Assembly: GCA_965655095.1 (NCBI GenBank) | Contig: OZ296649.1 | Location: 148,738,001 to 148,802,000 of the forward strand | Length of the DNA: 64,000 bases | Source of the DNA: Haplodiscus bocki | Taxonomy: Eukaryota | Direction: 5' to 3' | Part shown: in pieces, positions 1-32,783 of the stretch | Layout: every line of letters starts with the position of its first letter | Numbering within the stretch: position 1 is the first letter of the stretch | Notes under the pieces: model-generated | The model's database searches: none | What the model was told of the DNA's origin: nothing | Seen by the model: the letters and a program-made list of their open reading frames with translations, nothing else | Program-made: the position numbers and the translations under genes

Positions 1-3000
1 TTGGCAGAAATTCTCATATTAGGATTTGTTCATTTCGCCGCTTAGTGCACAATTCAACCTCAACCTCGTACAATTTGAACGGAACAATTCTTTTCAATCA
101 CATGCGTTTTTTCAGTTGTGTTTCGACATTTTTTGACCTGTTTTTTTGCGAAGAATCTTGAACGTCATGTTCTTTTTGGTTTTCTGAAGATTGCTAACAG
201 TTTTTAGTCTTTTACTTTCTCACTTACTTCCTCAAGTTAATTCGGTCTGCAAAAACCACATCAAGACAACCCAAATCTGTTAGTTGAAAAACTTATGTGG
301 TGGTGATGGAGTCTTTCGAAAATCGGTGTTGTAGACCAATCTCAGCAAACTGGCCTATTTTGAGTTTCTCAATTATCTTTAGACCTTTGTGCATACGGCA
401 AAATTAAGGAAAACACGTTGTTTGCAATGAACTCTGATAGTTACGAAAAAGTGACCTTGTTGTTCTTATTGAGAAAAATGTTTTTCGGGCTTTAATAAGG
501 AAACGTCTTCAAAATGGAAGAGCTGCGGTCAAGTTTCAGATGATGTTTTGTGAGACAATTGTTTCCTCCTTCAGGGCTCCAAAAGACCCCTATCTTGCAA
601 ATCTTGCAACAGGCGAACGAAGAGACCGTTTTGGTTCACCTAGATTTTTTCGGTTTTGGTTCGACATTTCTTTATCGTCTTTTCATCAAAGAGCTTTCAG
701 AGAGAGCTAATTACTTTTACATTGACGTTTGTTGATTTTTATTCAGTTGTCCATTCCCCTTTGCAGAGGGTCGAATAGCCACAATTCGTGGGAGGATTTA
801 CGATAAGTCTCAGACTATAATCTAGTTGTTGAAGTCCGACAATTTCCCATGTTTCACGGCAAAAGAATCTGAAAACTATAGCTTTTTGGGTATTCCGGTA
901 GTTCTTGACTAGTGAATTTTTTCCTTCGACACCTATTTCGTGAATCTACTTCTTTTTCGAAGAAGCGAATGAGGAAAAGTCAAGTCAGTCAGATAAACCG
1001 ATTGCATTGACGAAGTTTTTCTGTCGGCTGTTGTGTGATCAGATCTAGAAAAACCGGCCTTCTATTTCCTCCGGTAGTCCTTTGTAAATAAAACGAGGAA
1101 AACTCTTCGTTTGAAACCGCATCCAAAACGTTACAAGATACTATTCCCCTTGGTTTCAGTCGCTGAGAGATTTTTTCGATTGCTTTTTACACGAAAATGT
1201 TTTGTAAGTTGAGCTGTTTTTGTCAATTTGGACACGTTGTTTGTATTGTTATGAATCAATTGTTTCTCCATGGAGGGCTACAAATTACCTACTTTTGCAA
1301 AACTTCCGTACAAAACCCCGTCCCATTACATACCAGTTTTCAGATGTGATCCGTAATCTTCTACCGTACTTCTGCGAGAATTGAGAAAGAGCTACTTTCA
1401 ATCATTTTGGCAGAAATTCTCATATTAGGATTTGTTCATTTCGCCGCTTAGTGCACAATTCAACCTCAACCTCGTACAATTTGAACGGAACAATTCTTTT
1501 CAATCACATGCATTTTTTCAGTTGTGTTTTGACATTTTTTGACCTGTTTTTCTGCGAAGAAACTTGAACGTCATGTTCTTTTTGGTTTTCTGAAGATTGC
1601 TAACAGTTTTTAGTCTTTCACTTTCTCACTTACTTCCTCAAGTTATTTCGGTCTGCAAAAACCACATCAAGACAACCCAAATCTGTTAGTTGAAAAACTT
1701 ATGTGGCGGTGATGGAGTTTTTCGAAAATCGGTGTTGTAGACCGATCTCAGCAATTGGGCCTTTTTTGAGTTTCTCAATCCTTTTTAGACATTTGTGCAC
1801 ACGACAAAATTAAGGAAAACACGTTGTTTGCAATCAATTCTGTTGGTTACGAATTTTGGACCTGGTTTATATTTTTCAGAAAAATGTTTTTCGGGCTTTC
1901 ATAAGAAAACGTCTTCAAAATGGAAGAGCTACGGCCAACTTTCACATGTTGTTTGCCTTTTCTGGGACAATTGTTTCCCCATTCAGGGCTCCAAAAGGCC
2001 CCTATCTTGCAGATGTTGCACCAAGTGAACGAGGAGACCGCTTTGGTTTACCTAGGATTTTTCAGTTTCGGTTTGACATTTTTTTATCGACTTTTCATCA
2101 AAAAACTTTCAGGGAAAGCTAGTTTATGTTACAATGACGTTCGTTGTTTTTATACAGTTGTCCATTCCCCTTTGCAGAGGGTCAAGTAGCCAAAATTCGT
2201 TGGAGGCTTTACGTTAATTCTCAGACTATAATCTAGTTGAAGTCCGACATTTTCCAATGTTTTAGTGGAAAAAAATCTGAGAACTATTTTTTTTGGGCGT
2301 CCCGCAAATTACAGACTATTGAATTTTTCTAATTTGTCACCTAGTTCCTGAATCCACTTCGTTTTTGAAAAAAACGAATCAGGAAAAATCAAGTCAGTCA
2401 GGTAAACCGATTTAATTGCATTGACGAAGTTTTTCTGTCGGCTGTTTTGTGAACGGATCTTGAAAAATCGGCTTTCTAAATCTTCCGGTAGTCCTTTGTA
2501 AACAAAACGAGGAAAACTCTTTGTTTGAAACCGCATCCAAAACGTTACAAGAAACTATTCCCCTTGGTTTCAGTCGACGAGAGATTTTTTCGATTGCTTT
2601 TTACACGAAAGTGTTTTGTAATTTGAGCTGCTTTTGTCAACTTGGACTTGTTGTTTGTCTTGTTATGAATCAATTGTTTCTCCATGGAGGGCTACAAATT
2701 ACCTACCTTTGCAAAACTTCCGTAAAAAACCCCGTCCTATTACATACCAGTTTTCAGATGTGATCCGTAATCTTCTACCGTACTTCTGCGAGAGTTGAGA
2801 AAGAGCTACTTTCAATCATTTTGGCAGAAATTCTCATATTAGGATTTGTTCATTTCGCCGCTTAGTGAACAATTCAACCTCAACCTCGTACAATTTGAAC
2901 GGAACAATTCTTTTCAATCACATGCATTTTTTCAGTTGTGTTTCGACATTTTTTGACCTGTTTTTCTGCGAAGAAACTTGAACGTCATGTTCTTTTTGGT

Positions 3001-6000
3001 TTTCTGAAGATTGCTAACAGTTTTCAGTCTTTTACTTTCTCACTTACTTCCTCAAGTTATTTCGGTCTGCAAAAACCACATAAAGACAACCCAAATCTGT
3101 TAGTTGAAAAACTTATGTGGTGGTGATGGAGTCTTTCGAAAATCGGTGTTGTAGACCGATCTCAGCAAACAGGCCTATTTTGAGTTTCTCAATTATCTTT
3201 AGACCTTTTTGCATACGGCAAAATTAAGAAAAACGCGTTGTTTGCAATCAATTCTGTTGGTTACGAATTTTGGACCTTGTTTATATCTTTCAGAAAAATG
3301 TTTTTCGGGCTTTCATAAGAAAACGTCTTCAAAAGGGAAGAGCTACGGCCAACTTTCTTATGATGTTTGCCTTTTTTGAGACAATGTTTCCCCATTCAGG
3401 GCTCCAAAAGGCACCTATCTTGCAGATGTTGCACCAAGTGAACGAGGAGACCGCTTTGGTTTACCTAGGACTTCTCAGTTTCGGTTCGACATTTTTTTAC
3501 CGCCTTTTCATCGAAGAGCTTTTAAAGAGAGCTAATTTATGTTACAATGACGTTTGATGTTCTTTATACAGTTGTCCATTCCCCTTTACAGAGGGTCAAA
3601 TAGCAACAATTCGTTGGAGGATTTACGATAATTCTCAGACTAAAATCTAGTTGAAGTCCGACATTTTCTAATGTCTCAGTGCAAAAAAATCTGAGAACTA
3701 TAGCTTTTTTGGGTGTCTCGGAAATTACAGACTAATGATTTTTTTTACTTTGTCACCTAGTTCCCGAATCTACATCGTTTTCGAGGAAGGCAAAACGGAA
3801 AAGTCGAGTCAGTCAGATAACTGATTTAATTGCATTGACGAAGTTTTTCTGTCGGCTGTTTTGTGAACAGTTCTTGAAAAACCGGCTTCCAAAATCTTCC
3901 GGTAGTCCTTTGTAAAAAAAAAAGAGGAAAACTCTTTGTTTGAAACCGCATCCAAAACGTTATAAGATACTATTCCCCTTGGTCTCAGTCGCTGAGAGAG
4001 TTTTTAGTTGGGTTTTTACACCAAATAGTCTTGTAAGTTGAGCTGCTTTTGTCAACTTGGGCACGTTGTTTGTCTTGTTATGAATCAATTGTTTCCCCAT
4101 GAAGGGCTACAAATTACCTACTTTTGCAAAACTTCCGTAAAAAAACCCGTCCTATTACATACCAAATTTCTTTTGCTGTACGTAATCTTCTACCTAACTT
4201 CTCCGAGTTTTGAGAAAGAGCTACTTTCATACATTTTGGCAGTAAAGGTCATTTTAGGATTTGTTCATTTCCCCGCTTAGTGCACAATTCAGCTTCAATC
4301 TTGCACAAATTACACGAAACTATAATTTTCAATCAAATTCTAAATTTCAGTTGCGTTTCGACAGTTTTTGATTTGTTTTTCTGCAAAGAATCTTGAAACT
4401 CATGCTTTTTCGGGTGTTCTGAAGATTGCTACGAGTTTTTAGTCTTTTACTTTCGCACTTTTTTCCTCAAGATGTTTCAGTCTGCAAAAAACACATTGAG
4501 AAAACCCAAATCAGTTAGTTTAAAAACTTATGTGGCGGTGATGAAGTTTTTCGATAATCGGTGTTGTAGACCGATCTCAGCAAACTGGCCTATTTTGAGT
4601 TTCTCAATCCTTTTTAGACCTTTATCCATACGGCAAAATTAAGGAAAACACGTTGTTTGCAAAGACGTCTGATAGTTACGAAATATTGCCCTTGTATATT
4701 TTTTTGAGAAAAATGTTTTTCGGGCTTTCATAAGAAAGCGCCTTAAAAATGGAAGAGCTACGGCCAATTTTCACATGATGTTTGCCTTTTTGTGAGACAA
4801 TTGTTTCCCCATTCAGGGCTCCAAAAGGCCCCTATCTTGCAGATGTTGCACCATGTGAACGAAGAGACCGCTTTGGTTTACCTAGAACTTTTCAGTTTCG
4901 GTTCGACATTTTTTTACCACCTTTTCATCGAAGAGCTTTTAAAGAGAGCTAATTTATGTTACAATGACGTTTGTTGTTTTTTATACAGTTGTCCATTCCC
5001 CTTTGCAGAGGGTCAAATAGCCACATTTTGTTGGAGGATTTACGTTAATTCTCAGACTATAGTCTAAACGAAGTCCGACAATTTCCAATCTTTCAGTGCA
5101 AAAAAATCTGAGAACTATAGCTTTTTTGGGTGTCTCGGAAACTACAGACTAATGATTTTTTTTTACTTTGTCACCTAGTTCCTGAATATACTTCGTTTTC
5201 GAAGAAGCGAAACAGGAAAAATCGGGTCAGTCAGATAACTGATTTAATTGCATTGACGAAGTTTTTCTGTCGGCTGTTTTGTGAACAGTTCTTGAAAAAC
5301 CGGCTGCCTAAATTTTCCGGTAGTCCTTTGTAAAAAAAAGAGGAAAACTCTTTTTTTGAAACCGCATCCAAAACGTTACAAGATACTATTCCCCTTGGTT
5401 TCGGTCGCTGAGGTAGTTTTTAGTTGGGTTTTTACACGAAAATGTCTTGTAAGTTGAGCTGTTTTTGTCAACTTGGGCACGTTGTTTGTCTTGTTATGAA
5501 TCAATTGTTTCCCCATGAAGGGCTACAAATTACCTACTTTTGCAAAACTTCCGTAAAAAAACCCGTCCTATTACATACCAAATTTCTTTTGCTGTCCAAA
5601 ATCTTCTACCGTACTTCTGCGAGTTTTGGGAAAGAGCTACTTTCAGTCATTTTGGCAGAAATTGTCACCTTAGGATTCGCTCAATTCACCGCTTAGTGCA
5701 CCATTCAGCCTCAATCCTGCACAAATTACACGAAACGATAATTTTCAATCAAAATCTAAATTTCAGTTGCGTTTCGACAATTTTTGATCTGTTTTTCTGC
5801 GAAGAATCTTGAAAGTCATGCTCTTTTGGGTGTTCTTATGATTGCTACGAGTTTTTTGGCTTTTACTTCCGCACTGTTTTCCTCAAGATGTTTCAGTCTG
5901 CAAAAACTGCATTGAGAAAACCCAAATCAGTTAATTTAAAAACTTATGTGGCGGTGATGAAGTTTTTCGATAATCGGTGTTGTAGACCGATCTCAGCAAA

Positions 6001-9000
6001 CGGGCCTATTTTGAGTTTCTCAATCATTTTTAGACCTTTGTGCATACGGCAAAATTAAGGAAAATACGTTGTTTGCAATCAATTCTGATGGTTACGAAAT
6101 ATTGACCTTGTTTATATTTTTCAGAAAAATGTTTTTCGGGCTTTCATAAGAAAACGTCTTCAAAATGGAAGAGCTACGGCCAACTTTCACATGATGTTTG
6201 CCTTTTCTGGGACAATTGTTTCCCCATTCAGGGCTCCAAAAGGCCCCTATCTTGCAGATGTTGCACCAAGTGAACGAGGAGACCGCTTTGGTTTACCTAG
6301 GATTTTTCAGTTTCGGTTTGACATATTTTTATCGACTTTTCATCAAAAAACTTTCAGGGAAAGCTAGTTTATGTTACAATGACGTTCGTTGTTTTTTATA
6401 AAGTTGTCCATTCCCCTTTGCAGAGGGTCAAATAGCCACATTTTGTTGGAGGATTTACGTTAATTCTCAGACTATAGTCTAAACGAAGTCCGACAATTTC
6501 CAATCTTTCAGTGCAAAAAAATCTGAGAACTATAGCTTTTTTGGGTGTCTCGGAAACTACAGACTAATGATTTTTTTTTACTTTGTCACCTAGTTCCTGA
6601 ATATACTTCGTTTTCGAAGAAGCGAAACAGGAAAAATCGGGTCAGTCAGATAACTGATTTAATTGCATTGACGAAGTTTTTCTGTCGGCTGTTTTGTGAA
6701 CAGTTCTTGAAAAACCGGCTGCCTAAATTTTCCGGTAGTCCTTTGTAAAAAAAAGAGGAAAACTCTTTTTTTGAAACCGCATCCAAAACGTTACAAGATA
6801 CTATTCCCCTTGGTTTCGGTCGCTGAGGTAGTTTTTAGTTGGGTTTTTACACGAAAATGTCTTGTAAGTTGAGCTGTTTTTGTCAACTTGGGCACGTTGT
6901 TTGTCTTGTTATGAATCAATTGTTTCCCCATGAAGGGCTACAAATTACCTACTTTTGCAAAACTTCCGTAAAAAAACCCGTCCTATTACATACCAAATTT
7001 CTTTTGCTGTCCAAAATCTTCTACCGTACTTCTGCGAGTTTTGGGAAAGAGCTACTTTCAGTCATTTTGGCAGAAATTGTCACCTTAGGATTCGCTCAAT
7101 TCACCGCTTAGTGCACCATTCAGCCTCAATCCTGCACAAATTACACGAAACGATAATTTTCAATCAAAATCTAAATTTCAGTTGCGTTTCGACAATTTTT
7201 GATCTGTTTTTCTGCGAAGAATCTTGAAAGTCATGCTCTTTTGGGTGTTCTTATGATTGCTACGAGTTTTTTGGCTTTTACTTCCGCACTGTTTTCCTCA
7301 AGATGTTTCAGTCTGCAAAAACTGCATTGAGAAAACCCAAATCAGTTAATTTAAAAACTTATGTGGCGGTGATGAAGTTTTTCGATAATCGGTGTTGTAG
7401 ACCGATCTCAGCAAACGGGCCTATTTTGAGTTTCTCAATCATTTTTAGACCTTTGTGCATACGGCAAAATTAAGGAAAATACGTTGTTTGCAATCAATTC
7501 TGATGGTTACGAAATATTGACCTTGTTTATATTTTTCAGAAAAATGTTTTTCGGGCTTTCATAAGAAAACGTCTTCAAAATGGAAGAGCTACGGCCAACT
7601 TTCACATGATGTTTGCCTTTTCTGGGACAATTGTTTCCCCATTCAGGGCTCCAAAAGGCCCCTATCTTGCAGATGTTGCACCAAGTGAACGAGGAGACCG
7701 CTTTGGTTTACCTAGGATTTTTCAGTTTCGGTTTGACATATTTTTATCGACTTTTCATCAAAAAACTTTCAGGGAAAGCTAGTTTATGTTACAATGACGT
7801 TCGTTGTTTTTTATAAAGTTGTCCATTCCCCTTTGCAGAGGGTCAAATAGCCTCAATTCGTTGGAGGATGTACGTTAATTCTCAGACTATAATCTAAATG
7901 AAGTCCGACATTTTCCAATCTCTCAGTGCAAAAAAATCTGAGAACTATAGCTTTTTTGGGTGTCTCGGAAATTACAGACTAATGATTTTTTTTACTTTGT
8001 CACCTAGTTCCTGAATATACTTCGTTTTCGAAGAAGCGAAACAGGAAAACTCGGGTCAGTCAGATAACTGATTTAATTGCATTGACGAAGTTTTTCTGTC
8101 GGCTGTTTTGTGAACAGTTCTTGAAAAACCGGCTGCCTAAATCTTCCGGTAGTCCTTTGTAAAAAAAGAGGAAAACTCTTTTTTTGAAACCGCATCCAAA
8201 ACGTTACAAGATACTATTCCCCTTGGTTTCGGTCGCTGAGAGAAATTTTCGATTGCTTTTGACACGAAAGTGTTTTGTAAGTTGAGCTGCTTTCGTCAAC
8301 TTGGACATGTTGTTTGTCTTGTTATGAATCAATTGTTTCCCCATGAAGGGCTACAAATTATCTAATTTTGAAAAACTTCCGTAAAAAACCCCGTCCTATT
8401 ACATACCAATTTTCTTTTGCTGACCATAATCTTCTACCGTACTTCTGTGAGTTTTGAGAAAGAGCTACTTTCAATCATTTTGGCAGAAATTGTCATCTTA
8501 GGATTCGTTCAATTCACCGCTTAGTGCACCATTCAGCCTCAATCTAGCACAAGCTACACGAAACGATAATTTTCAATCAGATTGTAAATTTCAGTTGCGT
8601 TTATTCAATTTTTGATCTGTTTTTCTGCGAAGAATCTTGAAATTCATGCTCTTTTGGGTGTTTTGAAGATTGCTACGAGTTTTTAGTCTTTTACTTTCGC
8701 ACTTTTTTCCTCATGATGTTTCAGTCTGCAAAAAACACATTGAGAAAACCCAAATCAGTTAATTTAAAAACTTATGTGGCGGTGATGAAGTTTTTCGATA
8801 ATCGGTGTTGTAGACCGATCTCAGCAAATGGGCCTATTTTGAGTTTCTTAATCCTTTTTAGACCTTTGTTCATACGGCAAAATTAAGGAAAACACGTTGT
8901 TTGCAATCAATTCTGATGGTTACGAAATATTGACCTTGTTTATATTTTTCAGAAAAATGTTTTTCGGGCTTTCATAAGAAAACGTCTTCAAAATGGAAGA

Positions 9001-18000: not shown

Positions 18001-21000
18001 TCTGTCGGCTGCTTTTGAACAGTTCTTGAAAAACCGGCTTCTTAAATCTTCAGGTAGTCCCTTGTAAAAAAAACGAGGAAAACTCTTTGTATGAAAGCGC
18101 ATCCAAAAGATTGCAGTATACTATTCCTCCTTGTCTCAGTCGCTGAGAGAGTTTTTTGTTGGGTTTTTTTACGATAAAGTCTTGTAAGTCGAGCTGTTTT
18201 TGTCAACTTGGAAACGTTGTTTGTCTTGTATTGAATCAATTATTTCTCCATGAAGGGCTACAATATACCTATTTTTGCAATTTTTCCGTAGAAAGACCCC
18301 GTTCTATTACATACCAATTTCCTTTTGCTGTACGTAATCTTCTACGTAACTTCTGCGAGTTTTGAGAAAGAGCAACTTTCATACATTTTGGCAGAAATTG
18401 TCATGTTAGGATTTGTTCATTTTTCCGCTTAGTGGGCAATTCAGCCTCAATCTTGTACAATTTACACGGAACGATTCTTTTCAATCACAAGCTAATTTTC
18501 AGTCGTGTTTCGACAATTTTTGATCTGTTTTTCTGCGAAGAATCTTGAAAGTCATGTTCTTTTTGGTTTTCTGAAGATTGCTAACAGTTTTTAGTCTTTT
18601 ACTTTCTCACTTACTTCCTCAAGTTAATTCGGTCTGCAAAAACCACATCAAGACAACCCAAATCTGTTAGTTGAAAAACTTATGTGGCGGTGATGAAGTT
18701 TTTCGATAATCGGTGTCGTACACCGATCTCAGCAAACGGGCCTATTTTGAGTTTCTCAATCCTTTTTAGACCTTTGTGCATACGGCAAAATTAAGGAAAA
18801 CACATTGTTTGCAATCAATTCTGATGGTTACGAAATATTGACCTTGTTTATATTTTTCAGAAAAATGTTTTTCGGGCTTTCCTAAGAAAGCGCCTTAAAA
18901 ATGGAAGAGCTACGGCCAACTTTCACATGATGTTTGCCATTTTGTGAGACAATTGTTACCTCATTCAGGGCTCCAAAAGGCCTCAATCTTGCAAATCTTG
19001 CACCAGGCGAACAAAGAGAACGTTTTGTTTTACCTCAGATTTTTCGGTTTCGTTTCGACATTTTTTTATTGTCTTTTCATCAAAGGGCTTTCAGAGAGAG
19101 CTAAATTCTGTTACATTGACGTTTTTTGTTTTTCATACAGTTGTCCAATACCCTTTGCAGAGGGTCAAATAGCCACAATTTTCCGGAGGTTTTACGATAA
19201 GTCTCACACTATAATCTAGTTGAAGGCCGACATTTTCCAATGTTTCAGTGCAAAAGAATCTGAGAACTGTTGCTTTTTTGGGTATTCCGGAAACTACTGC
19301 CTAAAGAACTTTTTTTACTTTGTCACTTAGTTCCCGAATCTACATCGTTTTCGAGGAAGGCAAACAGGAAAAGTCGAGTCAGTCAGATAAACCAATTTAA
19401 TTGCATTGACGAAGTTTTTCTGTCGGCTGTTTTGTGAACACATCTTGAAAAACCGGCTACCTAAATCCTCCGGTAGTCCTTTGTAAAAAAACGATGAAAA
19501 CTCTTTGTTTGAAACCGCATCCAAAACGTTACAAGATACTATTCCTCTTTGTCACAGTCGCTGAGAGATTTCTTCGATTGCTTTTTACAAGAAAGTGTTT
19601 TGTAAGTTGAGCTGCTTTTGTCACCTTGGACACGTTGTTTGTCTTGTTATGAATCAATTGTTTCCCCATGAAGGACTACAAATTACCTATTTTTGCGAAA
19701 CTTCCGTAAAAACCATTTCCTATTATATACCAATTTTCTTTTGCTGTCCATAATCTTCTACCGTACTTCTGCGAGTTTTGAGAAAGAGCGACTTTCAATC
19801 ATTTTGCCAGAAATTGTCATCTTAGGACTCGTTCAATTCCCCACTTGGTGCACCACTCAGCCTCAATCTTGCACAAGTTACACGAAACGATAACTTTTAA
19901 TCAAATTCTAAATTTCAGTTGCGTTCCGACAGTCTTTGATCTGTTTTTCTGCGAAGAATCTTTAAAGTCATGCTCTTTTGGGTGTTCTGAAGGTTGCTAC
20001 GAGTTTTTAGTCTTCTTTTCTCACTTAGTTGCTCAAGTTATTTCAGTCTGCAAAAATCACATCAAGAAAACCCAAATCTGTTACTTGAAAAACTTCAGTT
20101 GCGGTGATGAATTTTTTCGATAATCGGTGTTGTAGGCCGATTTCGGAAAACGGGCCTGTTTTGAGTTTCTGAATCAATTATCAGACCTTTCTGCATACGG
20201 CAAAATTGAGGAAAACTGGTTGTTTGCGAAGACGTCTATTAGTTACGAAATATTGACCCTGTATAATTTTTTGAGAAAATGTTTTTCGGGCTTTCATAGG
20301 AAAACTCTTTGAAACGGAATTGCTGCATTCAATTTGGATTCAATGATTGCTATTTTGTGAGGCAGTTGTTTCCTCTTGTAGGGCTTCAAAAGGCCCCTAT
20401 CTTGCACCAGCCTAAAGAGGGGACCGTTTGACTTTACCCACAATTTTTTGGTTGTGGTTGGACATTCTTTTCAACGTGTTTTCATCAAAGAGGTTTCAGA
20501 GACCGCTAATTTCTGTTGCATTGACGTTGGTTGTGTTTTTTAAAGTTATCCATTCGCCTATGCAGCGCAACAAATAGCCATTATTATTAGCAAGATTTAA
20601 GATAAGACTCGAAGACTAAAGTTCAGTTGAAGTCCGACAATTTTCCATGTTTCGCTGCTACAGAATCCTGGAAGTTTAGCTTTTTTGGGCACTCCGTAAA
20701 TTGCTTTGAATTTTGAGTCTTCTACTTTGTCACAAAGTTCCTTATTTTACTGAGTTCTCAAAAAACCAAAATAAAGAACTCAAGTCAGTCAGATAAACCG
20801 ATTTGGTTACATTGACGAAAGTTTTCTGTCGGTCGTTTTGTGAACACATTTTGAAAAACCGGCTTTTTGAAACTTCCGGTAGTCCTTTGTAAAAAAAACG
20901 AGGAAAACTCTTTGTATGAAAGCGCATCCAAAAGATTGCAGTATACTATTCCTCCTTGTCTCAGTCGCTGAGAGATTTCTTCGATTGCTTTTTACAAGAA

Positions 21001-24000
21001 AGTGTTTTGTAAGTTGAGCTGCTTTTGTCACCTTGGACACGTTGTTTGTCTTGTTATGAATCAATTGTTTCCCCATGAAGGACTACAAATTACCTATTTT
21101 TGCGAAACTTCCGTAAAAACCATTTCCTATTATATACCAATTTTCTTTTGCTGTCCATAATCTTCTACCGTACTTCTGCGAGTTTTGAGAAAGAGCGACT
21201 TTCAATCATTTTGCCAGAAATTGTCATCTTAGGACTCGTTCAATTCCCCACTTGGTGCACCACTCAGCCTCAATCTTGCACAAGTTACACGAAACGATAA
21301 CTTTTAATCAAATTCTAAATTTCAGTTGCGTTCCGACAGTCTTTGATCTGTTTTTCTGCGAAGAATCTTTAAAGTCATGCTCTTTTGGGTGTTCTGAAGG
21401 TTGCTACGAGTTTTTAGTCTTCTTTTCTCACTTAGTTGCTCAAGTTATTTCAGTCTGCAAAAATCACATCAAGAAAACCCAAATCTGTTACTTGAAAAAC
21501 TTCAGTTGCGGTGATGAATTTTTTCGATAATCGGTGTTGTAGGCCGATTTCGGAAAACGGGCCTGTTTTGAGTTTCTGAATCAATTATCAGACCTTTCTG
21601 CATACGGCAAAATTGAGGAAAACAGGTTGTTTGCGAAGATGTCTAATAGTTACGAAATATTGACCCTGTATATTTTTTTGAGAAAATGTTTTTCGGGCTT
21701 ACATAGGAAAACTCTTTGAAACGGAATTGCTGCATTCAATTTGGATTCAATGATTGCTATTTTGTGAGGCAGTTGTTTCCTCTTGTAGGGCTTCAAAAGG
21801 CCCCTATCTTGCACCAGCCTAAAGAGGGGACCGTTTGACTTTACCCACAATTTTTTGGTTGTGGTTGGACATTCTTTTCAACGTGTTTTCATCAAAGAGG
21901 TTTCAGAGACCGCTAATTTCTGTTGCATTGACGTTGGTTGTGTTTTTTAAAGTTATCCATTCGCCTATGCAGCGCAACAAATAGCCATTATTATTAGCAA
22001 GATTTAAGATAAGACTCGAAGACTAAATTTCAGTTGAAGTCCGACAATTTTCCATGTTTCGCTGCTACAGAATCCTGGAAGTTTAGCTTTTTTGGGCACT
22101 CCGTAAATTGCTTTGAATTTTGAGTCTTCTACTTTGTCACAAAGTTCCTTATTTTACTGAGTTCTCAAAAAACCAAAATAAAGAACTCAAGTCAGTCAGA
22201 TAAACCGATTTGGTTACATTGACGAAAGTTTTCTGTCGGTCGTTTTGTGAACACATTTTGAAAAACCGGCTTTTTGAAACTTCCGGTAGTCCTTTGTAAA
22301 AAAAACGAGGAAAACTTTTTGAAAGAAAGCGCATCCAAAAGGTTGCAGTATACCATTCCTCTTTGTCTCATTCGCTGAGAGATTTTTTTTGTTGGGTTTT
22401 TATACGATAAAGTCTTGTAAGTCGAGCTGTTTTTGTCAACTTGGAAAGGTTGTTTGTCTTGTTGTGAAACAATTGTTTCCCCATGAAGGGCTACGATCTA
22501 ACTACTTCAACAAACCTCAAAGAAAATAACCCGTCCTTTTACTTACCAGTTTTCGTTTGCACTACGTCATTTTCTACCGTATCTTTGCGAGTTTTGAGAA
22601 AGAGCTTATATCAATTGCTTTATCACAAATTATCATCTTAGGATTCCTTCATTTCCCCGTTTAGTGTATCATTCAGCCTCAATCTTGTACAAATTACACG
22701 AAAAGATAATTTTCAATCAAATTCTAAAATTCAGTTGCGTTTCGACAATTTTTGATCTGTTTTTCTGCAAAGATTTTCGAAACTGATGCTTTTTTGGGTG
22801 TTCCAAAGATTGCTTCGACTTGAAAGTCTTTTACTTTCTCAGTTAGTTTGGTAAATTTTAGTCAAATGGTTAATTTTCAGTTGCGTTTCGGCAGTTTTTG
22901 ATCTGTTCTTCTGCAAAGAATCTTGAAACTCATGCTTTTTCGGGTGTTCTGAAGATTGCTACGAGTTTTTAGTCTTTTACTTTCGCACTTTTTTCCTCAA
23001 GATGTTTCAGTCTGCAAAAAACACATTGAGAAAACCCAAATCAGTTAGTTGAAAAACTTATGTGGCTGTGATGAAGTTTTTCGATAATCGGTGTGTAGAC
23101 CAATCTCAGCAAGCGGGCCTATTTTCAGTTTCTCAATCCTTTTTAGACCTTTGTGCATACGGCAAAAATAAGGAAAACACGTTGTTTGCAATGACTCTGA
23201 TAGTTACGAAATATTCACCTTGTTTTTCTATTTGGAGAAAAATGTTTTTCGGACTTTCATAAGGAAACGTCTTCAAAATGGAAGAGCTACGGTCAAGTTT
23301 CAGATGATGTTTTGTGAGACAATTGTTTCCTCCTTCAGGGCTCAAATATCAAGTCAGTCAGGTAAACCGATTCAATTGCATTGACGAAGTTTTTCTGTCG
23401 GCTGTTTTGTGATCAGATCTTCAAAAATCGGCTTCCTAAATCTTCCGGTAGTCCTTTGTAAATTAAGCGAGGAAAGCTCTTTATTTGAAACCGCATCCAA
23501 AACGTTACAAGATACTAGTCCCCTTGGTTTCAGTCGCTGAGAGAGTTTTTTCGTTGGGTTTTTATACGATAATGTCTCTAAGTCGAGCTATTTTTGTCAA
23601 CTTGGACAAGTTGTTTGTCTTGTTATGAATCAGCTGTTTCCCCATGACTGGCTCCAAACTACCTACTTCGGCAAAGTTGAAGAAAAATATCCCGTCCTAT
23701 TGCTTACCAGTTTTTCTTTGCGGTACGTAATTTTCTACCGTATCTTTGCGAATTTTTGAGAAAGACCAATTTCCTTTGTTTTGACCCAAACTGTCATTTT
23801 AGGATTCGTTCATTTCACCGTTTACCGGATGATTCAGCCTCAATCTCGTACAGTTTACACGAAACGGTTTTTTTGAATCACATGCTAATTTTCAGTTGCG
23901 TTCCGACAATTTTTGATCTGCTTTTCTGCAAAGAATCTTAAAAGTCATGCTCTTTTAAGTGTTCTGAAGATTCTTACGAATTTTTAGTCTTTTTTTCTCA

Positions 24001-27000
24001 CTTAGTTCCTCAAGTTATTTCAGTCTGCAAAAATCACATCAAGAAAACCCAAATCTGTTAGTTGAAAGACTTAATTGGCGGTGATGAATTTTTTCGATAA
24101 TCGGTGTTGTAGACCGATCTCAGCAAACGGGCCTGTTTCGAGTTTCTCAATCTTTTTTAGACCTTCGTGCATACGACAAACTTGAGAAAAACACGTTGTT
24201 TGCAATGAGGTCTGATAGTTACGAAGAATTGACCTCGTAAATTTTTTTGAGAAAAAAGTTTTTCGGGCTTTCATAGGAAAGCATCTTTAAAATGGAAGTG
24301 CTACATTCAACTTGGATTCGATGGTTGCCATTTTGCGAGGCAGTTGTTTCTTCATTTAGAGCTTCAAAAGGCCTTACCTTGCACCAGCCGAACGAAGGGA
24401 CCGTTTGAGTTTTCCCACGAGTTTTTGGTTGGGGTTCGACATTCTTTTAAACGTGTTTTCATCAAAGAGGTTTCAGAGACAGCTAATTTCTGTTGCATTG
24501 ACGTTGGTTGTGTTTTTTAAAGTTATCCGTTCGCCTATGCAGCGCACCAAATCACCAAATAGCCGTTCTTATTAGCAGGATTTAGGATAAGACTCGAAGA
24601 CTAAAGTTCAATTGAAGTCCGACAATTTTCCATGTTTCACTGCTATGGAATCCTGGAAGTTTAGCTTTTTTGGGCATTCCGTAGATTGCAATAAAAATTG
24701 AGTTTTTTGCTTGGTCACATAGTTCCTGAAATTATTGAGTTTTCGAAAAACCAAAATAAGAAAACTCAAGTCAGTCAGATAAACCGAATTGATTACATTG
24801 ACGGAAACTTTCTGTCGGCCGTTTCGTGAACAGTTTTAGAAAAACCGGCTTTTTTTATCTTCCGGTAATCCTTTGTAAAAAACGAGGAAAACTCTTTGTT
24901 TGAAAGCGCATCCAAAAGGTTAGAAGATACTATTCCTCTTTGTCTCAGTCGCTGAGAGTTTTTTCGTTGGGTTTTTATACGATAATGTCTCTAAGTCGAG
25001 CTATTTTTGTCAACTTGGACAAGTTGTTTGTCTTGTTATGAATCAGCTGTTTCCCCATGACTGGCTCCAAACTACCTACTTCGGCAAAGTTGAAGAAAAA
25101 TATCCCGTCCTATTGCTTACCAGTTTTTCTTTGCGGTACGTAATTTTCTACCGTATCTTTGCGAATTTTTGAGAAAGACCAATTTCCTTTGTTTTGACCC
25201 AAACTGTCATTTTAGGATTCGTTCATTTCACCGTTTACCGGATGATTCAGCCTCAATCTCGTACAGTTTACACGAAACGGTTTTTTTGAATCACATGCTA
25301 ATTTTCAGTTGCGTTCCGACAATTTTTGATCTGCTTTTCTGCAAAGAATCTTAAAAGTCATGCTCTTTTAAGTGTTCTGAAGATTCTTACGAATTTTTAG
25401 TCTTTTTTTCTCACTTAGTTCCTCAAGTTATTTCAGTCTGCAAAAATCACATCAAGAAAACCCAAATCTGTTAGTTGAAAGACTTAAGTGGCGGTGATGA
25501 ATTTTTTCGATAATCGGTGTTGTAGACCGATCTCAGCAAACGGGCCTGTTTCGAGTTTCTCAATCTTTTTTAGACCTTCGTGCATACGACAAACTTGAGA
25601 AAAACACGTTGTTTGCAATGAGGTCTGATAGTTACGAAGAATTGACCTCGTAAATTTTTTTGAGAAAAAAGTTTTTCGGGATTTCATAGGAAAGCATCTT
25701 TAAAATGGAAGTGCTACATTCAACTTGGATTCGATGGTTGCCATTTTGCGAGGCAGTTGTTTCTTCATTTAGAGCTTCAAAAGGCCTTACCTTGCACCAG
25801 CCGAACGAAGGGACCGTTTGAGTTTTCCCACGAGTTTTTGGTTGGGGTTCGACATTCTTTTAAACGTGTTTTCATCAAAGAGGTTTCAGAGACAGCTAAT
25901 TTCTGTTGCATTGACGTTGGTTGTGTTTTTTAAAGTTATCCGTTCGCCTATGCAGCGCACCAAATCACCAAATAGCCGTTCTTATTAGCAGGATTTAGGA
26001 TAAGACTCGAAGACTAAAGTTCAATTGAAGTCCGACAATTTTCCATGTTTCACTGCTATGGAATCCTGGAAGTTTAGCTTTTTTGGGCATTCCGTAGATT
26101 GCAATAAAAATTGAGTTTTTTGCTTGGTCACATAGTTCCTGAAATTATTGAGTTTTCGAAAAACCAAAATAAGAAAACTCAAGTCAGTCAGATAAACCGA
26201 ATTGATTACATTGACGGAAACTTTCTGTCGGCCGTTTCGTGAACAGTTTTAGAAAAACCGGCTTTTTTTATCTTCCGGTAATCCTTTGTAAAAAACGAGG
26301 AAAACTCTTTGTTTGAAAGCGCATCCAAAAGGTTAGAAGATACTATTCCTCTTTGTCTCAGTCGCTGAGAGTTTTTTCGTTGGGTTTTTATACGATAATG
26401 TCTCTAAGTCGAGCTATTTTTGTCAACTTGGACAAGTTGTTTGTCTTGTTATGAATCAGCTGTTTCCCCATGACTGGCTCCAAACTACCTACTTCGGCAA
26501 AGTTGAAGAAAAATATCCCGTCCTATTGCTTACCAGTTTTTCTTTGCGGTACGTATTTTTCTACCGTATCTTTGCGAATTTTTGAGAAAGACCAATTTCC
26601 TTTGTTTTGACCCAAACTGTCATTTTAGGATTCGTTCATTTCACCGTTTACCGGATGATTCAGCCTCAATCTCGTACAGTTTACACGAAACGGTTTTTTT
26701 GAATCACATGCTAATTTTCAGTTGCGTTCCGACAATTTTTGATCTGCTTTTCTGCAAAGAATCTTAAAAGTCATGCTCTTTTAAGTGTTCTGAAGATTCT
26801 TACGAATTTTTAGTCTTTTTTTCTCACTTAGTTCCTCAAGTTATTTCAGTCTGCAAAAATCACATCAAGAAAACCCAAATCTGTTAGTTGAAAGACTTAA
26901 GTGGCGGTGATGAATTTTTTCGATAATCGGTGTTGTAGACCGATCTCAGCAAACGGGCCTGTTTCGAGTTTCTCAATCTTTTTTAGACCTTCGTGCATAC

Positions 27001-28990
27001 GACAAACTTGAGAAAAACACGTTGTTTGCAATGAGGTCTGATAGTTACGAAGAATTGACCTCGTAAATTTTTTTGAGAAAAAAGTTTTTCGGGATTTCAT
27101 AGGAAAGCATCTTTAAAATGGAAGTGCTACATTCAACTTGGATTCGATGGTTGCCATTTTGCGAGGCAGTTGTTTCTTCATTTAGAGCTTCAAAAGGCCT
27201 TACCTTGCACCAGCCGAACGAAGGGACCGTTTGAGTTTTCCCACGAGTTTTTGGTTGGGGTTCGACATTCTTTTAAACGTGTTTTCATCAAAGAGGTTTC
27301 AGAGACAGCTAATTTCTGTTGCATTGACGTTGGTTGTGTTTTTTAAAGTTATCCGTTCGCCTATGCAGCGCACCAAATCACCAAATAGCCGTTCTTATTA
27401 GCAGGATTTAGGATAAGACTCGAAGACTAAAGTTCAATTGAAGTCCGACAATTTTCCATGTTTCACTGCTATGGAATCCTGGAAGTTTAGCTTTTTTGGG
27501 CATTCCGTAGATTGCAATAAAAATTGAGTTTTTTGCTTGGTCACATAGTTCCTGAAATTATTGAGTTTTCGAAAAACCAAAATAAGAACACTCAAGTCAG
27601 TCAGATAAACCGAATTGATTACATTGACGGAAACTTTCTGTCGGCCGTTTCGTGAACAGTTTTAGAAAAACCGGCTTTTTTTATCTTCCGGTAATCCTTT
27701 GTAAAAAACGAGGAAAACTCTTTGTTTGAAAGCGCATCCAAAAGGTTAGAAGATACTATTCCTCTTTGTCTCAGTCGCTGAGAGTTTTTTCGTTGGGTTT
27801 TTATACGATAATGTCTCTAAGTCGAGCTATTTTTGTCAACTTGGACAAGTTGTTTGTCTTGTTATGAATCAGCTGTTTCCCCATGACTGGCTCCAAACTA
27901 CCTACTTCGGCAAAGTTGAAGAAAAATATCCCGTCCTATTGCTTACCAGTTTTTCTTTGCGGTACGTATTTTTCTACCGTATCTTTGCGAATTTTTGAGA
28001 AAGACCAATTTCCTTTGTTTTGACCCAAACTGTCATTTTAGGATTCGTTCATTTCACCGTTTACCGGATGATTCAGCCTCAATCTCGTACAGTTTACACG
28101 AAACGGTTTTTTTGAATCACATGCTAATTTTCAGTTGCGTTTCGACAATTTTTGACCTGTTTTTCTGCGAAGAATCTTGAAAGTCATGCTCTTTTGGCAT
28201 TTCTGAGGATTGCTAAGAGTTTGTACTTTTACTTTCTGATTTAGTTCCTCAAGTTAATTCAGTCTGCAAAAAACACATTGAGAAAACCCAAATCAGTTAG
28301 TTTAAAAACTTATGTGGCGGTGATGAAGTTTTTCGATATTCGGTGTTGTAGACCAATCTCAAAAAACGGGCCTATTTTGACTTTCTGAATCATTTTCTAG
28401 ACCTTTGCGCATACGGCAAAATTGAGGAAAACACATTGTTTGCTATCACGCCTACTAGTTACGAAATAATGACCTTGTATATTTTTTGAAAAAATGTTTT
28501 TCGGTCTTTCATAAGAAAGCGTCTTGAAAATGGAAGAGCTACGGCCAACTTTCACATGATGTTTGCCATTTTGTGAAGCAATTGTTTCCTCGTTCAGGGC
28601 TCCAAAAGGCCCCTATTTTGCAAATCTTGCACCAGCCGAAGGAAGAGCCCATTTTGGTTTACCTATGATTTTGCGGTTTCGCTTCGACATTTTTTTATCA
28701 TCTTTTCACCAAAGAGCTTTCAGAGAGAGCTGATTTCTGTTACATTGACGTTTGTTGTCTTTTAGACAGTTGTACATTTCCCTATTCAGGGCGCCAAAAA
28801 GCCACAAGTTTTCATCAGGATTCACGATAAGCCTCTTAGACTAAACTTCAGTTGAAGTTCGACATTTTTCCTTCTGTTTGACTGCGAAAGAAACTTGAAA
28901 GTCGTGCATTTCTTTGGATTTTCCAAAAATTGCTGAGTTTTGCGTTTTTTATTTTGTCAGCTAGGCCCTGAATTTACTTCATTTTCGAAC
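1..28990. repeat. Tandem satellite array, ~1.41 kb unit, about 20.5 copies (continues past the left edge of the window)
   Basis: The marker CGGTGT(T/C)GTA recurs at about 323, 1730, 3143, 4559, 5974, 7389, 8802, 10221, 11636, 13047, 14468, 15871, 17293, 18710, 20123, 21530, 23087, 24101, 25514, 26927 and 28340. Spacing is ~1403-1422 bp except for two rearranged units. The ORF track shows the same short peptides at this period. Confidence 0.98.
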
Positions 28991-31289
28991 GAATTCGTTC
29001 CTTCCACCAACGTATTCGTTGATACTTTTTCATTTGTAGAAGGCTTTTCCAATCGAAACTTCTTGATTTTCGCACAATGAACAGAATTATCATGGTAGGC
29101 CGAAAATTGTAACTATTATTTTGTCGATAATCAAACTCTAAATTTTCTAAAACTCGTCTGCCGTAAAATACTGCTTCCGCAAGTGAAAGACACTTTAATC
29201 GAACTAATTGTTATAGAAAATTACTAATTAGAAAGAAACAAGAAAACAGAGGCTTGAATTCTTCCGACAATGTCTGAATCGAAAACAAATTCTTCTATGT
29301 TTTACCATTCATTTCTACACCTTTTTGAAGGAAAATATCGCATTGCGACTGCGTCGTTTGTTGAATCTTTCCAGTAATTGCGGTTGGGGATTCTCAATTT
29401 TCCGGAGATGAATTTAAAATAACCAAACTGCTTCAAAGGAACAGTTTGGCTCACGGTAATTTTACATAAAGCTTTCGTCATTTTTCTGGGACGTGATACG
29501 CTTGAAAGTGCCTGCTATGTTAAAGCAAATCAGGATTGAGAATTAAAAACGACCCTCCTTTTTGTCACACAGTGGGCAGCACGAAAATTTTTGCTGCATA
29601 TCAAATGGCAATCATGTGTTGGATGAAAAAAAAATCAAATTGAATCAAAACACGACGGAAATTATGCTTTAAACGCCATGAATGAAATCAATTTTTGAAT
29701 TTTGAAGATCCAATATGCCCATGGGGGTCGTTTTTCACGGGACAATAGTTGTTTCATGTTTTGTTCCCTTCAAAAAATTTACCAGAACATCAAAAATTTA
29801 AAGTACTCTTTGGTAAAATATTTCCTGCCTAACTGTCATTACTTCAAACTCGAAAACTGCGAACACATCGTAGTTTTACACGGTGGAAAAGGCCACTGTA
29901 ATAACTGGGCACTTTTATTAAAAGCGCCGACCAAATCGGATATGTCAGTATACGGGTGATCTTGAAAAATCTTTACTTTGGGGATTTTTCTCTGAGACTG
30001 TTACAAACGGTTTTGTCGCCGCAAATTTGACTTTCGTGTTCCCCTATTTGAATGATTAAACGAAATATCGCCGCTGTTTCGAAGTTCTTCTTTGAAAAAA
30101 TTCAAAATCTAATCGGTGCAAAAAGACATCAATTTTTGACATTTTCAACGTGTCTTGTATTTTTCAAATTCTGACGTCCATTGTTCTACCCTGGCAACCA
30201 CAGCCCATAAACACCAATCTCCAAATTTCATAGGATTGAATTAATCGCCAGTTCGCACTGACAAAACTTGATTAACAATTGTATTTCGAAATACAGAATA
30301 CATATTTGATTGTGAATAGGAAAAGTATATCACGTAATTACAAATGTGCAAGATTGGAAATCGAACTTATCGGACATCATACTGATTCCTCCATTTTATC
30401 TGTACTTGAAGGCAGGAAGTTAATATCATTTGCCAAGCCAATTTCAATACCCATACGGCATTTTTTTGATGTACAAAATGTTTCTTCATACAAAGGGATT
30501 AAAAAAAAAGAGTGAATATTGTAAGTTCGCCGAAATCAAAGGTCCTCAAAGCCAATATTCGATTCTATTAATTAACAAATCAGCAAAAAGTTAATGACGA
30601 AAAACCTCTTGAGAAATTGATCGAAGTAACAACATTTTTTTTCTACCGGATTTTTTCACCTGCCCGCCCGACCACTTATCAATCAGATTTTACTGCATTG
30701 AAAATCGCCACAAATAGTAAATGAAGAAATAGTTTCTTCTAAACAAACTTGAAAGTCAGTTCTTGCAATTGACAGATGATTTTTTTTCAAAAATCTCATT
30801 CATTCATCAAATGCTACAAAGCGCAGTGAGAAGTAATCAACTAATAAATAAAAGCTAATCATTTTATAATTGAAGATAGTACTGTATCATTTAGTCAATT
30901 ATAATTACAATAACGCCAGAAGTTTCCCTATTATAACAAATATCTTCAAAGCTTTGAAACCTGTATCCTTGAGTTCTACTTGAGAGGGTCTTTTTTTAAG
31001 GAGAGCTAAAGTGAATCCAAGAAAAGGAAGCTTTTAATGAGATATTATGTTCAACAGGGAAAGAAGTAATATCAAGTTATGATTTGTGATTCATATATAA
31101 GCACCTATTTCACAGGGGAGCAGAAATGGGAGGCGGTATTTGGGGAAAGGTTTGTGTCGTCTTTGGCATTTGCCCCAGTTAAGTCCAATACTGGTCCGAA
31201 TGACTGGATGTGGTCACCCTTGTTTCTTCGTCTAAACTCTACCAAGTACTATTGTTCCAAACCAGGCAACAAAAGTAACCGCCACAGTC

Positions 31290-32607: not shown

Positions 32608-32783
32608 TCATAAAGGTGATACGAAATTGGAGGGGAACAATCCCGACTTTCCTCTCAGTTCGCCCGTCCACCAGTCGTTGTCGTCTTTGCACAGAATGTT
32701 GATCACATCTCCCACGTTGAACGTCAATTCATCGTCTCGTTCGGCCGTGAATGCAAATTGTGCTCGTACTCTTTCAGCAGTTC
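32608..32783 (-). CDS. ITSN: Terminal coding exon of intersectin/Dap160-like adaptor, C-terminal SH3 domain (SH3E-like)
   Basis: Acceptor tttgtag|GA at 32784/32783 (phase 1). Encodes (G)TAERVRAQFAFTAERDDELTFNVGDVINILCKDDNDWWTGELRGKSGLFPSNFVSPL*, which carries the canonical SH3 motifs ELxF, WW and GLFPxNF. TGA at 32610-32608. Confidence 0.85.

What the first reader, a model, noticed from the sequence alone, without database searches (positions are those of the whole stretch)
1..28990. 1.41 kb satellite looks like a hierarchical higher-order repeat: 2 x ~705 bp, probably 8 x ~177 bp
Seen: each unit has two homologous halves. Examples are CAATTGTTTCC..CAT..AGGGCT.CAAA at ~556, ~1257 and ~1968; GTTGAAGTCCGACATTTT...GAATCTGAGAA vs GTTGCGTTTCGACAATTT...GAATCTTGAAA; and GACGAAGTTTTTC vs GATGAAGTTTTTC. 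A weaker motif of the form TT..GTTGC.TTCGACA.TTTT recurs at ~650, 828, 1003, 1179, 1340 and 1517, i.e. ~175 bp steps, and 1413/8 = 176.6. The plus strand is T-rich with frequent T-tracts. Inference: a nucleosome-sized monomer amplified to a 4-mer and then an 8-mer, the architecture known from alpha-satellite HORs. This is a candidate centromeric or pericentromeric satellite in an invertebrate.
Basis: partly seen in the sequence, partly recalled or inferred. Interest (0 to 1): 0.72.

Follow-up and report, generated by a model that had tools for sequence, protein, structure and literature searches.

The report
Transposon-born eight-monomer satellite array
This 51-kb block of non-coding 1.41-kb tandem repeats really is built from eight old ~177-bp pieces, but those pieces are the inner repeats of a common jumping gene (a Helentron-type element) and the block is one small locus beside a gene, so it is an ordinary transposon-born satellite and probably not a centromere.

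Summary
Window 1-28781 is a non-coding tandem array with a 1.41-kb period and units 77-100% identical. It runs left of the window: about 51 kb of repeat in about 36 units, C2:148,699,420-148,766,781, split by a 16.4-kb insertion. Each unit is a diverged dimer (700 + 717 bp, 59% identity). Each half consists of four ~177-bp monomers, which only profile searches show; plain autocorrelation has no 177-bp peak.

The same monomer tiles the interior of a ~3.2-3.45-kb non-coding dispersed element with thousands of copies. That element has Helentron-type (HINE) ends: a 12-nt 5'-terminal/3'-subterminal inverted repeat, then a 3' palindrome. The 705-bp half matches four consecutive, position-specific monomers of that element. 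The array abuts the element's 3' terminal ~365 bp (window 29001-29362) in the right order and orientation. So the array grew from the central repeats of one resident copy.

A 28-mer specific to the array occurs 37 times in the 1.5-Gb assembly, all at this locus, and an SH3 exon lies 3.2 kb away. Nothing points to a centromere. The scan has reported the same monomer/transposon link at other loci of this genome (s1-376504, s1-359361). This is a new member of a known kind.

The parts
1..28781 (+). Tandem array with a 1.41-kb period. It holds a partial unit (1-758), 15 full units (759-21964), a rearranged stretch (21965-24555) and three older units (24556-28781). It continues left of the window to C2:148,699,420, with a 16.4-kb interruption.
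5060..5236 (+). Monomer 1 of an example unit (5001-6415). It is the type of the transposon's last regular monomer (position -1). Its homologue in the other half is monomer 5, ~5760-5936.
5237..5412 (+). Monomer 2, the variant type found once per transposon directly after the regular monomers (position 0). Its homologue is monomer 6, ~5937-6125.
5413..5759 (+). Monomers 3 and 4, generic upstream monomer types (positions -3/-2). Their homologues are monomers 7 and 8, ~6126-6476.
21965..24555 (+). Rearranged units. Consensus 1-881 is followed by 744-1241 and then 221-1415, giving one partial duplication and one deletion.
28787..28990 (+). Degenerate partial unit (end of monomer 8 plus a monomer-1-like stretch, 72-74% identity) at the right edge of the array.
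29001..29362 (+). Terminal ~365 bp of the Helentron-type element (70-77% identical to 15 or more dispersed copies). It holds the 3' subterminal inverted-repeat copy (~29327-29338), a decayed palindrome (29339-29353) and the T-rich terminus (29362).

Best explanation
The array is a locus-specific, non-coding satellite that grew out of the central tandem repeats of one resident copy of a non-autonomous Helentron-type transposon (HINE).

The transposon family is ~3.2-3.45 kb long, has thousands of copies, and its interior is made of ~178-bp monomers.

Shown:
- The monomers of the array are the transposon's monomers.
- The 705-bp half equals four consecutive transposon positions (-3, -2, -1, 0).
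- The array is contiguous with the transposon's 3' end.

Inferred history:
1. A misaligned exchange between monomers four periods apart duplicated the 4-monomer block.
2. The two copies diverged to ~60% identity.
3. The 8-monomer dimer was then amplified by repeated unequal crossing-over to ~36 units.
4. Turnover continued: monomer-sized deletions gave a re-amplified 7-monomer variant, and recent exact duplications of whole units followed.

No cellular function is implied. The array is a by-product of recombination in transposon-borne repeats.
For: Structure of the array.

The array-derived monomer profile finds 2-7 head-to-tail monomers, spaced 170-190 bp, in 12 of 12 and then 29 of 30 dispersed loci on all large chromosomes.

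Those loci share kb-scale non-coding flanks with a sharp common 3' end. Four independent copies also share a common 5' end.

The ends fit a HINE:
- The 5' end carries ATATTTTCCGTC, and its complement GACGGAAAATAT sits near the 3' end. After it come a palindrome with a 6-bp stem and a ~9-nt T-rich tail.
- This matches the HINE definition in PMC4067079 and PMC7492417.
- The first look found 4013 candidate copies.
- Rep + PIF1 helicase genes are present in the genome.

Weak monomer hits continue at +170, +360, +530, +710 and +890 bp beyond the variant monomer, so the transposon's interior is periodic throughout.

Position-class profiles map the array's monomers as follows:
- m1/m5 match position -1 (62 and 85 bits).
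- m2/m6 match position 0 (58 and 31 bits).
- m3/m7 and m4/m8 match positions -3/-2.

The transposon's 3' module lies directly right of the array, on the same strand and in the expected order.

The two halves align colinearly across the novel 0-to-(-3) junction. They share 2.3 times more derived sites than random pairs of transposon copies (0.195 against 0.084).

The 7-monomer variant (consensus 512 joined to 681) occurs six times, and its junction is in monomer register to within 7 profile columns.

No Rfam family, tRNA or long ORF was found.

Expansion of Helitron/Helentron internal arrays into satellites is described in PMC12628747. That includes an 'intermediate' form with transposon parts on one side only.
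Against: - No 5' module of the transposon was found at the left edge, or anywhere in the 114 kb examined. The parent copy is therefore seen from one side only.
- Between the last array unit and the 3' module, ~1.2 kb of the full-length element (positions 0 to +5 and the first part of the 3' module) is missing.
- The 5' end of the family rests on four copies.
- An autonomous partner with the same ends was not identified.
- The array's size and single-locus status rest on the assembly alone.
Confidence: 0.8

Rival explanations
1. This is a centromeric or pericentromeric higher-order-repeat satellite. The array would be the CENP-A-binding or flanking satellite of chromosome C2, analogous to a chromosome-specific alpha-satellite HOR.
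For: - The architecture is HOR-like, with a nucleosome-sized monomer.
- Older, more diverged units lie toward the right edge.
- The position, 2.95 Mb from one end of a 151.7-Mb scaffold, would fit a telocentric chromosome.
- Other arrays of the same monomer family exist on other chromosomes (scan notes, unchecked).
Against: - There is only ~51 kb of repeat at one locus. All 37 genome-wide matches of an array-specific 28-mer lie inside it.
- Units are 77-94% identical, not homogenised.
- An SH3 exon lies 3.2 kb away.
- The origin lies inside a dispersed transposon.
- An unchecked scan note reports a larger satellite block 40.6 Mb upstream on the same chromosome (s1-359352).
Confidence: 0.05
2. 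The array was made by aberrant rolling-circle replication of a Helitron-type circle that had lost its terminator, and was integrated as a ready-made tandem array. In-place unequal exchange played no main part.
For: - Helitron-type elements replicate by rolling circle, and tandem arrays of truncated elements with a single 3' end are described (PMC12628747).
- This array has exactly one 3' end, on its right side.
Against: - The units contain no element ends. The terminus motif occurs only at 29330-29360 (and in another copy at 52470).
- A single burst would give uniform units. Here three levels of divergence are nested: halves at 59%, units at 77-94%, and some pairs at 100%. There are also locally re-amplified variants. 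Several rounds well separated in time are needed, and at least the later ones occurred in place.
Confidence: 0.1
3. The two halves come from two different transposon copies inserted side by side, not from an in-place duplication of one 4-monomer block.
For: The halves are only 59% identical, which is no closer than many pairs of dispersed copies (65-77%).
Against: - Both halves have the same novel junction from position 0 back to position -3, which intact elements lack, and they align colinearly across it.
- There is a 2.3-fold excess of shared derived sites over random copy pairs.
- No element ends lie between the halves.
Confidence: 0.04
4. This is an assembly artefact, or a tandem gene or RNA-gene cluster.
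For: Long tandem repeats are error-prone in assemblies. The read-based check was not possible.
Against: - Units differ in a structured way: there is a gradient, there are variants, and there is an inserted 16.4-kb element.
- No N runs occur in the 114 kb examined.
- There is no Rfam hit, no tRNA, and no ORF over 109 aa.
Confidence: 0.02

Closest known systems
Cg_HINE central repeats and the Cg170/HindIII satellite of the Pacific oyster (PMC7492417; review PMC12628747)
   Same: - A non-autonomous Helentron with subterminal inverted repeats and a 3' palindrome.
- Central tandem repeats of 140-180 bp, mostly 2-5 per copy.
[quoted passage not shown]
   Different: - Here the amplified unit is an 8-monomer higher-order repeat of strongly diverged, position-specific monomers (25-61% pairwise identity), not a run of similar monomers.
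- No sequence relationship to the oyster families was tested.
- The host taxon is unknown to me.
DINE-1 / DINE-TR1 of Drosophila (PMC4067079; Dias et al. 2015 as cited in PMC12628747)
   Same: - 12-13-nt subterminal inverted repeats.
- A short inverted repeat nested at the 5' end.
- A 3' stem-loop.
- T-rich insertion sites.
- Central tandem repeats that have expanded into satellite arrays.
   Different: - DINE-1 elements are shorter, and their expanded arrays lie mainly in heterochromatin and on sex chromosomes.
- Here almost the whole interior of the element is periodic, and the expanded array lies next to a gene.
Human alpha-satellite higher-order repeats
   Same: - A ~171-177-bp monomer.
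- A multi-monomer unit amplified as a block.
- Monomer-register unequal crossing-over producing units with one monomer fewer.
- More diverged units toward an edge.
   Different: - Alpha HOR arrays are Mb-sized, their units are 95-100% identical, they occur on every chromosome, and they bind CENP-A.
- This array holds 51 kb of repeat, its units are 77-94% identical, it is a single locus, it is transposon-derived, and no centromere evidence exists for it.
Rolling-circle-amplified centromeric Helitron arrays of plants (Xiong et al. 2016, as summarised in PMC12628747)
   Same: An array linked to a Helitron-type element, with a single 3' end.
   Different: Those arrays repeat truncated whole elements with multiple 5' ends. 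Here only four internal monomers are repeated, and no 5' end is present.

Membership tests
HINE (non-autonomous Helentron) - applies to the dispersed parent element | Subterminal inverted repeats of ~12-13 nt, a few nt from the 5' end and some tens of nt from the 3' end | tested here: met
   ATATTTTCCGTC starts 2-4 nt from the 5' end in 4 copies. Its complement GACGGAAAATAT lies ~25-37 nt from the 3' end in ~25 copies. The definition comes from PMC4067079.
HINE (non-autonomous Helentron) - applies to the dispersed parent element | Short palindrome or stem-loop within ~8-35 nt of the 3' end | tested here: met
   A palindrome with a 6-bp stem and 3-nt loop (CGCAGT GCG ACTGCG) ends ~9 nt from the terminus. 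It folds at -5.9 kcal/mol in L039. It is decayed in the window's own copy.
HINE (non-autonomous Helentron) - applies to the dispersed parent element | No coding capacity, high copy number and a dispersed distribution | tested here: met
   No ORF over 100 aa in the copies. There were 4013 first-look candidates on all large scaffolds.
HINE (non-autonomous Helentron) - applies to the dispersed parent element | Insertion into a TT or T-rich target, with runs of T at the boundaries | tested here: inconclusive
   Most copies end in ...CTCTTGTT(T), and the 5' ends start with T(T)A. No empty site was examined, so the exact boundary and target are not fixed.
HINE (non-autonomous Helentron) - applies to the dispersed parent element | An autonomous Helentron (Rep-helicase-endonuclease) with the same ends | not tested
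   Rep + PIF1 genes are present, with 147 matches and ORFs up to ~2780 aa.
Transposon-derived satellite (expansion of a transposon's internal array) | The satellite monomer is homologous to the internal repeats of a mobile element | tested here: met
   The profiles find each other in both directions, with shuffle controls.
Transposon-derived satellite (expansion of a transposon's internal array) | The array is physically continuous with transposon parts, in the expected order and orientation | tested here: met
   The 3' module lies at window 29001-29362 on the same strand. The 5' module is absent, so this is the 'intermediate', one-sided form.
Centromeric higher-order-repeat satellite (alpha-satellite type) | Multi-monomer unit amplified as a block | tested here: met
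Centromeric higher-order-repeat satellite (alpha-satellite type) | A large, homogenised array that is the dominant repeat at the primary constriction, with related arrays on the other chromosomes | tested here: not met
   There is 51 kb of repeat at one locus, and units are 77-94% identical. This is an assembly-level test only.
Centromeric higher-order-repeat satellite (alpha-satellite type) | CENP-A or kinetochore association | not testable with these tools

The most novel reading that the evidence does not exclude
In this animal, small chromosome-specific higher-order arrays grown from Helentron central repeats could be the functional centromeres. This array would then mark a near-terminal centromere of chromosome C2, and its sister arrays (for instance C7:23.87 Mb) would mark those of other chromosomes.
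Probability: 0.05. Interest if true: 0.75.

Novelty: new member of a known kind. Interest (0 to 1): 0.3.

Why it matters
This locus is an unusually legible example of how a satellite with a higher-order repeat is born from a transposon. The parent family, the exact four internal monomers that were copied, the one surviving transposon end and the later steps can all be read from the sequence. Those later steps are dimer divergence, 8-mer amplification, a 7-mer variant and recent exact duplications.

It also shows that an alpha-satellite-like hierarchy can arise without any centromere context. That is a useful caution for scans that flag HOR-like arrays as centromere candidates.

It does not open a new question. 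Helentron- and Helitron-borne repeats that expand into satellites are well documented in oysters and Drosophila. The scan has already met this monomer family at other loci of this genome.

Tried and rejected
- **Coding or RNA-gene cluster:** rejected. There is no Rfam family at the gathering threshold, no tRNA, and no ORF over 109 aa in the array.
- **Tandem Repeats Finder:** it cannot see the array, because its longest period is 500 bp, and it sees no 177-bp array, because the monomers are too diverged.
- **Plain autocorrelation:** it gave no 177/353-bp peak. Taken literally this would have 'refuted' the 8-mer, but profile searches show that the test is too insensitive for monomers 25-61% identical.
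- **Monomers 2/6 against the array-only profiles:** no hit. The question was resolved only with the genome-wide profile.
- **Canonical Helitron ends (5' TC, 3' CTRR):** not seen. The ends are of the Helentron type.
- **First guess at the transposon's 3' end (L010 position 1063):** wrong. Homology continues there, and the true end is ~390 bp further on.
- **First guess at the transposon's 5' end (L019):** this was a truncated copy, corrected with longer loci.
- **5' module of the transposon near the array:** not found.
- **Array inside an intron of a long intersectin-type isoform:** no RhoGEF exon lies anywhere near C2:148.6-148.8 Mb, and no obvious exons lie in the 10 kb left of the array. Only 'next to an SH3-domain gene' can be said.
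- **Pfam scan of three ORFs in the 16.4-kb interruption:** no hits.
Full report
**1. What is there**

Identity autocorrelation over window 1-28990 peaks at lags 1413-1418 and their multiples. One unit used as a blastn query tiles 1-28781 head to tail on the + strand. Eighteen aligned units give a 1417-bp consensus and are 77-100% identical. There are two exact neighbouring duplicates (5001/6416 and 24543/25956). A better-preserved core lies at roughly 3.6-19 kb (87-94%), and the three units nearest the right edge are the most diverged (78-81% to the core). Window 21965-24555 is rearranged, and 28787-28990 is a degenerate partial unit.

The array holds no Rfam family, no tRNA, and no ORF over 109 aa.

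It continues left of the window. The window is C2:148,738,001-148,802,000 of a 151.7-Mb scaffold in a 1.5-Gb assembly. The repeat occupies C2:148,699,420-148,709,966 and 148,726,329-148,766,781. That is about 51 kb in about 36 units, split by 16.4 kb of unrelated sequence.

**2. The dimer**

The consensus aligns with itself at offset 700/717 over 1358 bp (60% identity, 293 bits). The best score in 60 dinucleotide shuffles was 32.6 bits. A global alignment of the two halves is 59% identical over 683 columns and is colinear throughout. The 2 x ~705 bp claim is certain.

**3. The ~177-bp monomers**

Gapped self-alignment gives offsets of 176 (34 bits) and 536/881 (44 bits), only just above the shuffle maximum.

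Profiles settle the matter:
- An nhmmer profile of four segments (consensus 60-236, 590-759, 760-936 and 1305-59) finds two more, at 413-580 (22.5 bits) and 1194-1271 (9.6 bits). The maximum in 600 shuffles was 5.8 bits.
- The remaining pair (237-412 and 937-1125) is not found by array-only profiles.
- A profile of 102 monomers taken only from dispersed copies elsewhere in the genome does recognise that segment type in register. It scores 25-44 bits on the dispersed versions. On segment 2 of the array it scores 9-14 bits in 10 of 18 units, against a shuffle maximum of 5.5 in 720 shuffles.
- With those dispersed-only profiles, window 1-29400 is tiled by 164 elements. Start-to-start spacing has median 182 bp, and 95% of spacings fall between 150 and 205 bp. 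The order is M T M M M T M M in every unit.

Pairwise identity of the eight consensus monomers is 52-61% for the four homologous pairs (1/5, 2/6, 3/7, 4/8) and 25-52% otherwise. So the 8 x 177 bp claim is right, with one qualification: two of the eight are a distinct variant.

**4. Where the monomers come from**

The full 1.41-kb unit matches only this locus, but 60-160-bp pieces hit many places on all large scaffolds at 71-89% identity.

In all 12 loci fetched first, and in 29 of 30 fetched next, the array-derived profile finds 2-7 head-to-tail monomers spaced 170-190 bp. These loci share kb-scale non-coding homology around the monomers. They have a sharp common 3' end and variable 5' truncation. 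Longer loci define a common 5' end in four independent copies and an element length of ~3.2-3.45 kb. The first look of the genome search found 4013 candidates.

The ends are as follows:
- The 5' end reads T(T)ATTATTTTCCGTCG..., followed by a nested short inverted repeat that folds well (-7.1 kcal/mol, z -3.7).
- The 3' end reads ...GACGGAAAATAT, then a palindrome with a 6-bp stem (CGCAGT GCG ACTGCG), then ~9 nt ending in T's.
- The 12 nt ATATTTTCCGTC at the 5' end are therefore the reverse complement of the 3' subterminal stretch.

This combination defines non-autonomous Helentrons (HINEs, including DINE-1) according to PMC4067079 and PMC7492417: subterminal inverted repeats, a 3' palindrome, T-rich boundaries, no coding capacity and central tandem repeats. 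Rep + PIF1 helicase genes are abundant in the genome. I could not link one to these ends.

**5. How the array relates to the element**

In the dispersed copies the variant segment (here called position 0) occurs once, directly after the regular monomers. Weaker monomer hits continue at about +170, +360, +530, +710 and +890 bp. Nearly the whole interior is therefore periodic, with the best-preserved monomers on the 5' side.

Profiles built for each position (-4 to +5) score the array's monomers as follows:

| Array monomers | Best-matching element position | Bits |
|---|---|---|
| m1 / m5 | -1 | 62 / 85 |
| m2 / m6 | 0 | 58 / 31 |
| m3 / m7 | -3 / -2 | 57-60 / 33-34 |
| m4 / m8 | -3 / -2 | 28-32 / 27 |

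Read cyclically, each 705-bp half is the contiguous block (-3, -2, -1, 0) of the element, followed by a jump back to -3.

Directly right of the array, window 29001-29362 is 70-77% identical to the last ~365 bp of 15 or more dispersed copies. It lies on the same strand and ends with the subterminal repeat, a decayed palindrome and the terminus at 29362. The terminus motif occurs nowhere inside the array.

The 5' module is absent from the 114 kb examined. About 1.2 kb of the full element is missing between the array and the 3' module. This is the one-sided 'intermediate' form described for an oyster satellite in PMC12628747.

**6. History (inferred)**

- Both halves carry the same novel junction (position 0 back to -3) and align across it.
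- They share derived sites 2.3 times more often than random pairs of dispersed copies (0.195 against 0.084 of variable sites).
- Each half differs from the element consensus at 31-35% of sites, and the halves differ from each other at 40%.

The most economical reading has five steps:
1. A HINE copy sat at this site.
2. An exchange between monomers four periods apart duplicated a 4-monomer block.
3. The two copies diverged for a long time.
4. The 8-monomer dimer was amplified.
5. Later events were local.

The later events include a 1249-bp variant that lacks consensus 513-680. Its junction is in monomer register to within 7 profile columns, and it was itself copied six times in the left part of the array. 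There is also a single ~190-bp deletion that is not exactly in register, as well as partial duplications and two exact unit duplications.

Three nested levels of divergence cannot come from one rolling-circle burst. At least the later rounds therefore happened in place by unequal exchange. A rolling-circle origin of the very first duplication cannot be excluded.

**7. Centromere question**

- A 28-mer specific to monomer 3 (with monomer 7 at 3 mismatches) occurs 37 times in the assembly. All matches lie within C2:148,699,449-148,760,497 on the + strand. None lie on other scaffolds or unplaced contigs, and the reversed control gave none.
- The array is small and not homogenised.
- It lies 2.95 Mb from one scaffold end.
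- Its element end is 3.2 kb from an SH3-domain exon (32611-32868, minus strand, SH3_1 E = 2.7e-16). A second SH3 exon lies at 60589-60867.
- I could not show that the array lies inside an intron. No RhoGEF exon is nearby, and no obvious exon lies in the 10 kb to the left.
- A sister array with a 2314-bp period (13 x 178 bp) sits on C7 at 23.87 Mb, starting just after an intact HINE 5' end. Local amplification of this element's repeats is therefore recurrent.

Nothing here supports a centromeric role. It can be excluded only by chromatin data or cytology.

**8. Earlier scan notes**

Notes on other pieces of this genome describe arrays of a ~175-177-bp monomer linked to Helitron-type elements (s1-376504, s1-359361). 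First-reader notes mention HINE families (s1-382628, s1-382756). I treated these as leads only. The link between monomer and transposon, the Helentron-type ends and the positional mapping were established here on independent loci.

**9. Limits**

- The host taxon was not determined.
- The 5' end of the family rests on four copies.

Noticed in passing
L020/L021/L010 (C7:23,860,000-23,880,000): A second higher-order array of the same monomer family, with a 2314-bp period (about 13 monomers) and copies 96% identical. It starts just after an intact HINE 5' end at L020:2759 and contains no 3' terminus motif.
   Followed up: partly
genome-wide, (e.g. C3:133.755-134.306 Mb, C9:18.63-18.98 Mb, C1:134.82-135.01 Mb, C23:0.10-0.31 Mb): Helitron_like_N matches with open frames of 1.4-2.8 kaa come in runs spaced about 15 kb apart. 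This suggests tandem arrays of whole autonomous Helitron-type elements.
   Followed up: no
L022, L023, L024 (C5:103.05, 102.70, 102.53 Mb): Three HINE copies 95-97% identical to one another, including identical 3' flanks, one of them inverted. This looks like a segmental duplication and not independent insertions.
   Followed up: partly
window 52470-52500 (+): A second Helentron-type 3' terminus (subterminal repeat, palindrome and CTCTTG tail, with 6 mismatches to the family motif), belonging to another copy in the window.
   Followed up: no
window 59172-60297: Tandem 25/26-bp repeats at 59172-59295 and 60127-60297, and 15-bp repeats at 59422-59667 and 59737-59812, are reverse complements of each other. 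This is a foldback-type element with tandem-repeat arms, next to the SH3 exon at 60589-60867.
   Followed up: no
window 32611-32868 (-) and 60589-60867 (-): Two SH3-domain exons of a minus-strand gene spanning at least 28 kb (Pfam SH3_1 E = 2.7e-16 and 3.4e-07). The first ends in a stop codon 3.2 kb from the array's transposon end. A first-reader note calls the gene intersectin; I did not verify that.
   Followed up: partly
C2:148,709,967-148,726,328 (L012 end, L017, L011 1-8328): A 16.4-kb non-array insertion splits the array. Its ORFs of 182-215 aa have no Pfam hit. A C2H2-like ORF in it resembles an ORF in the left flank (L018 5345-5605), so it is probably a repeated element.
   Followed up: partly
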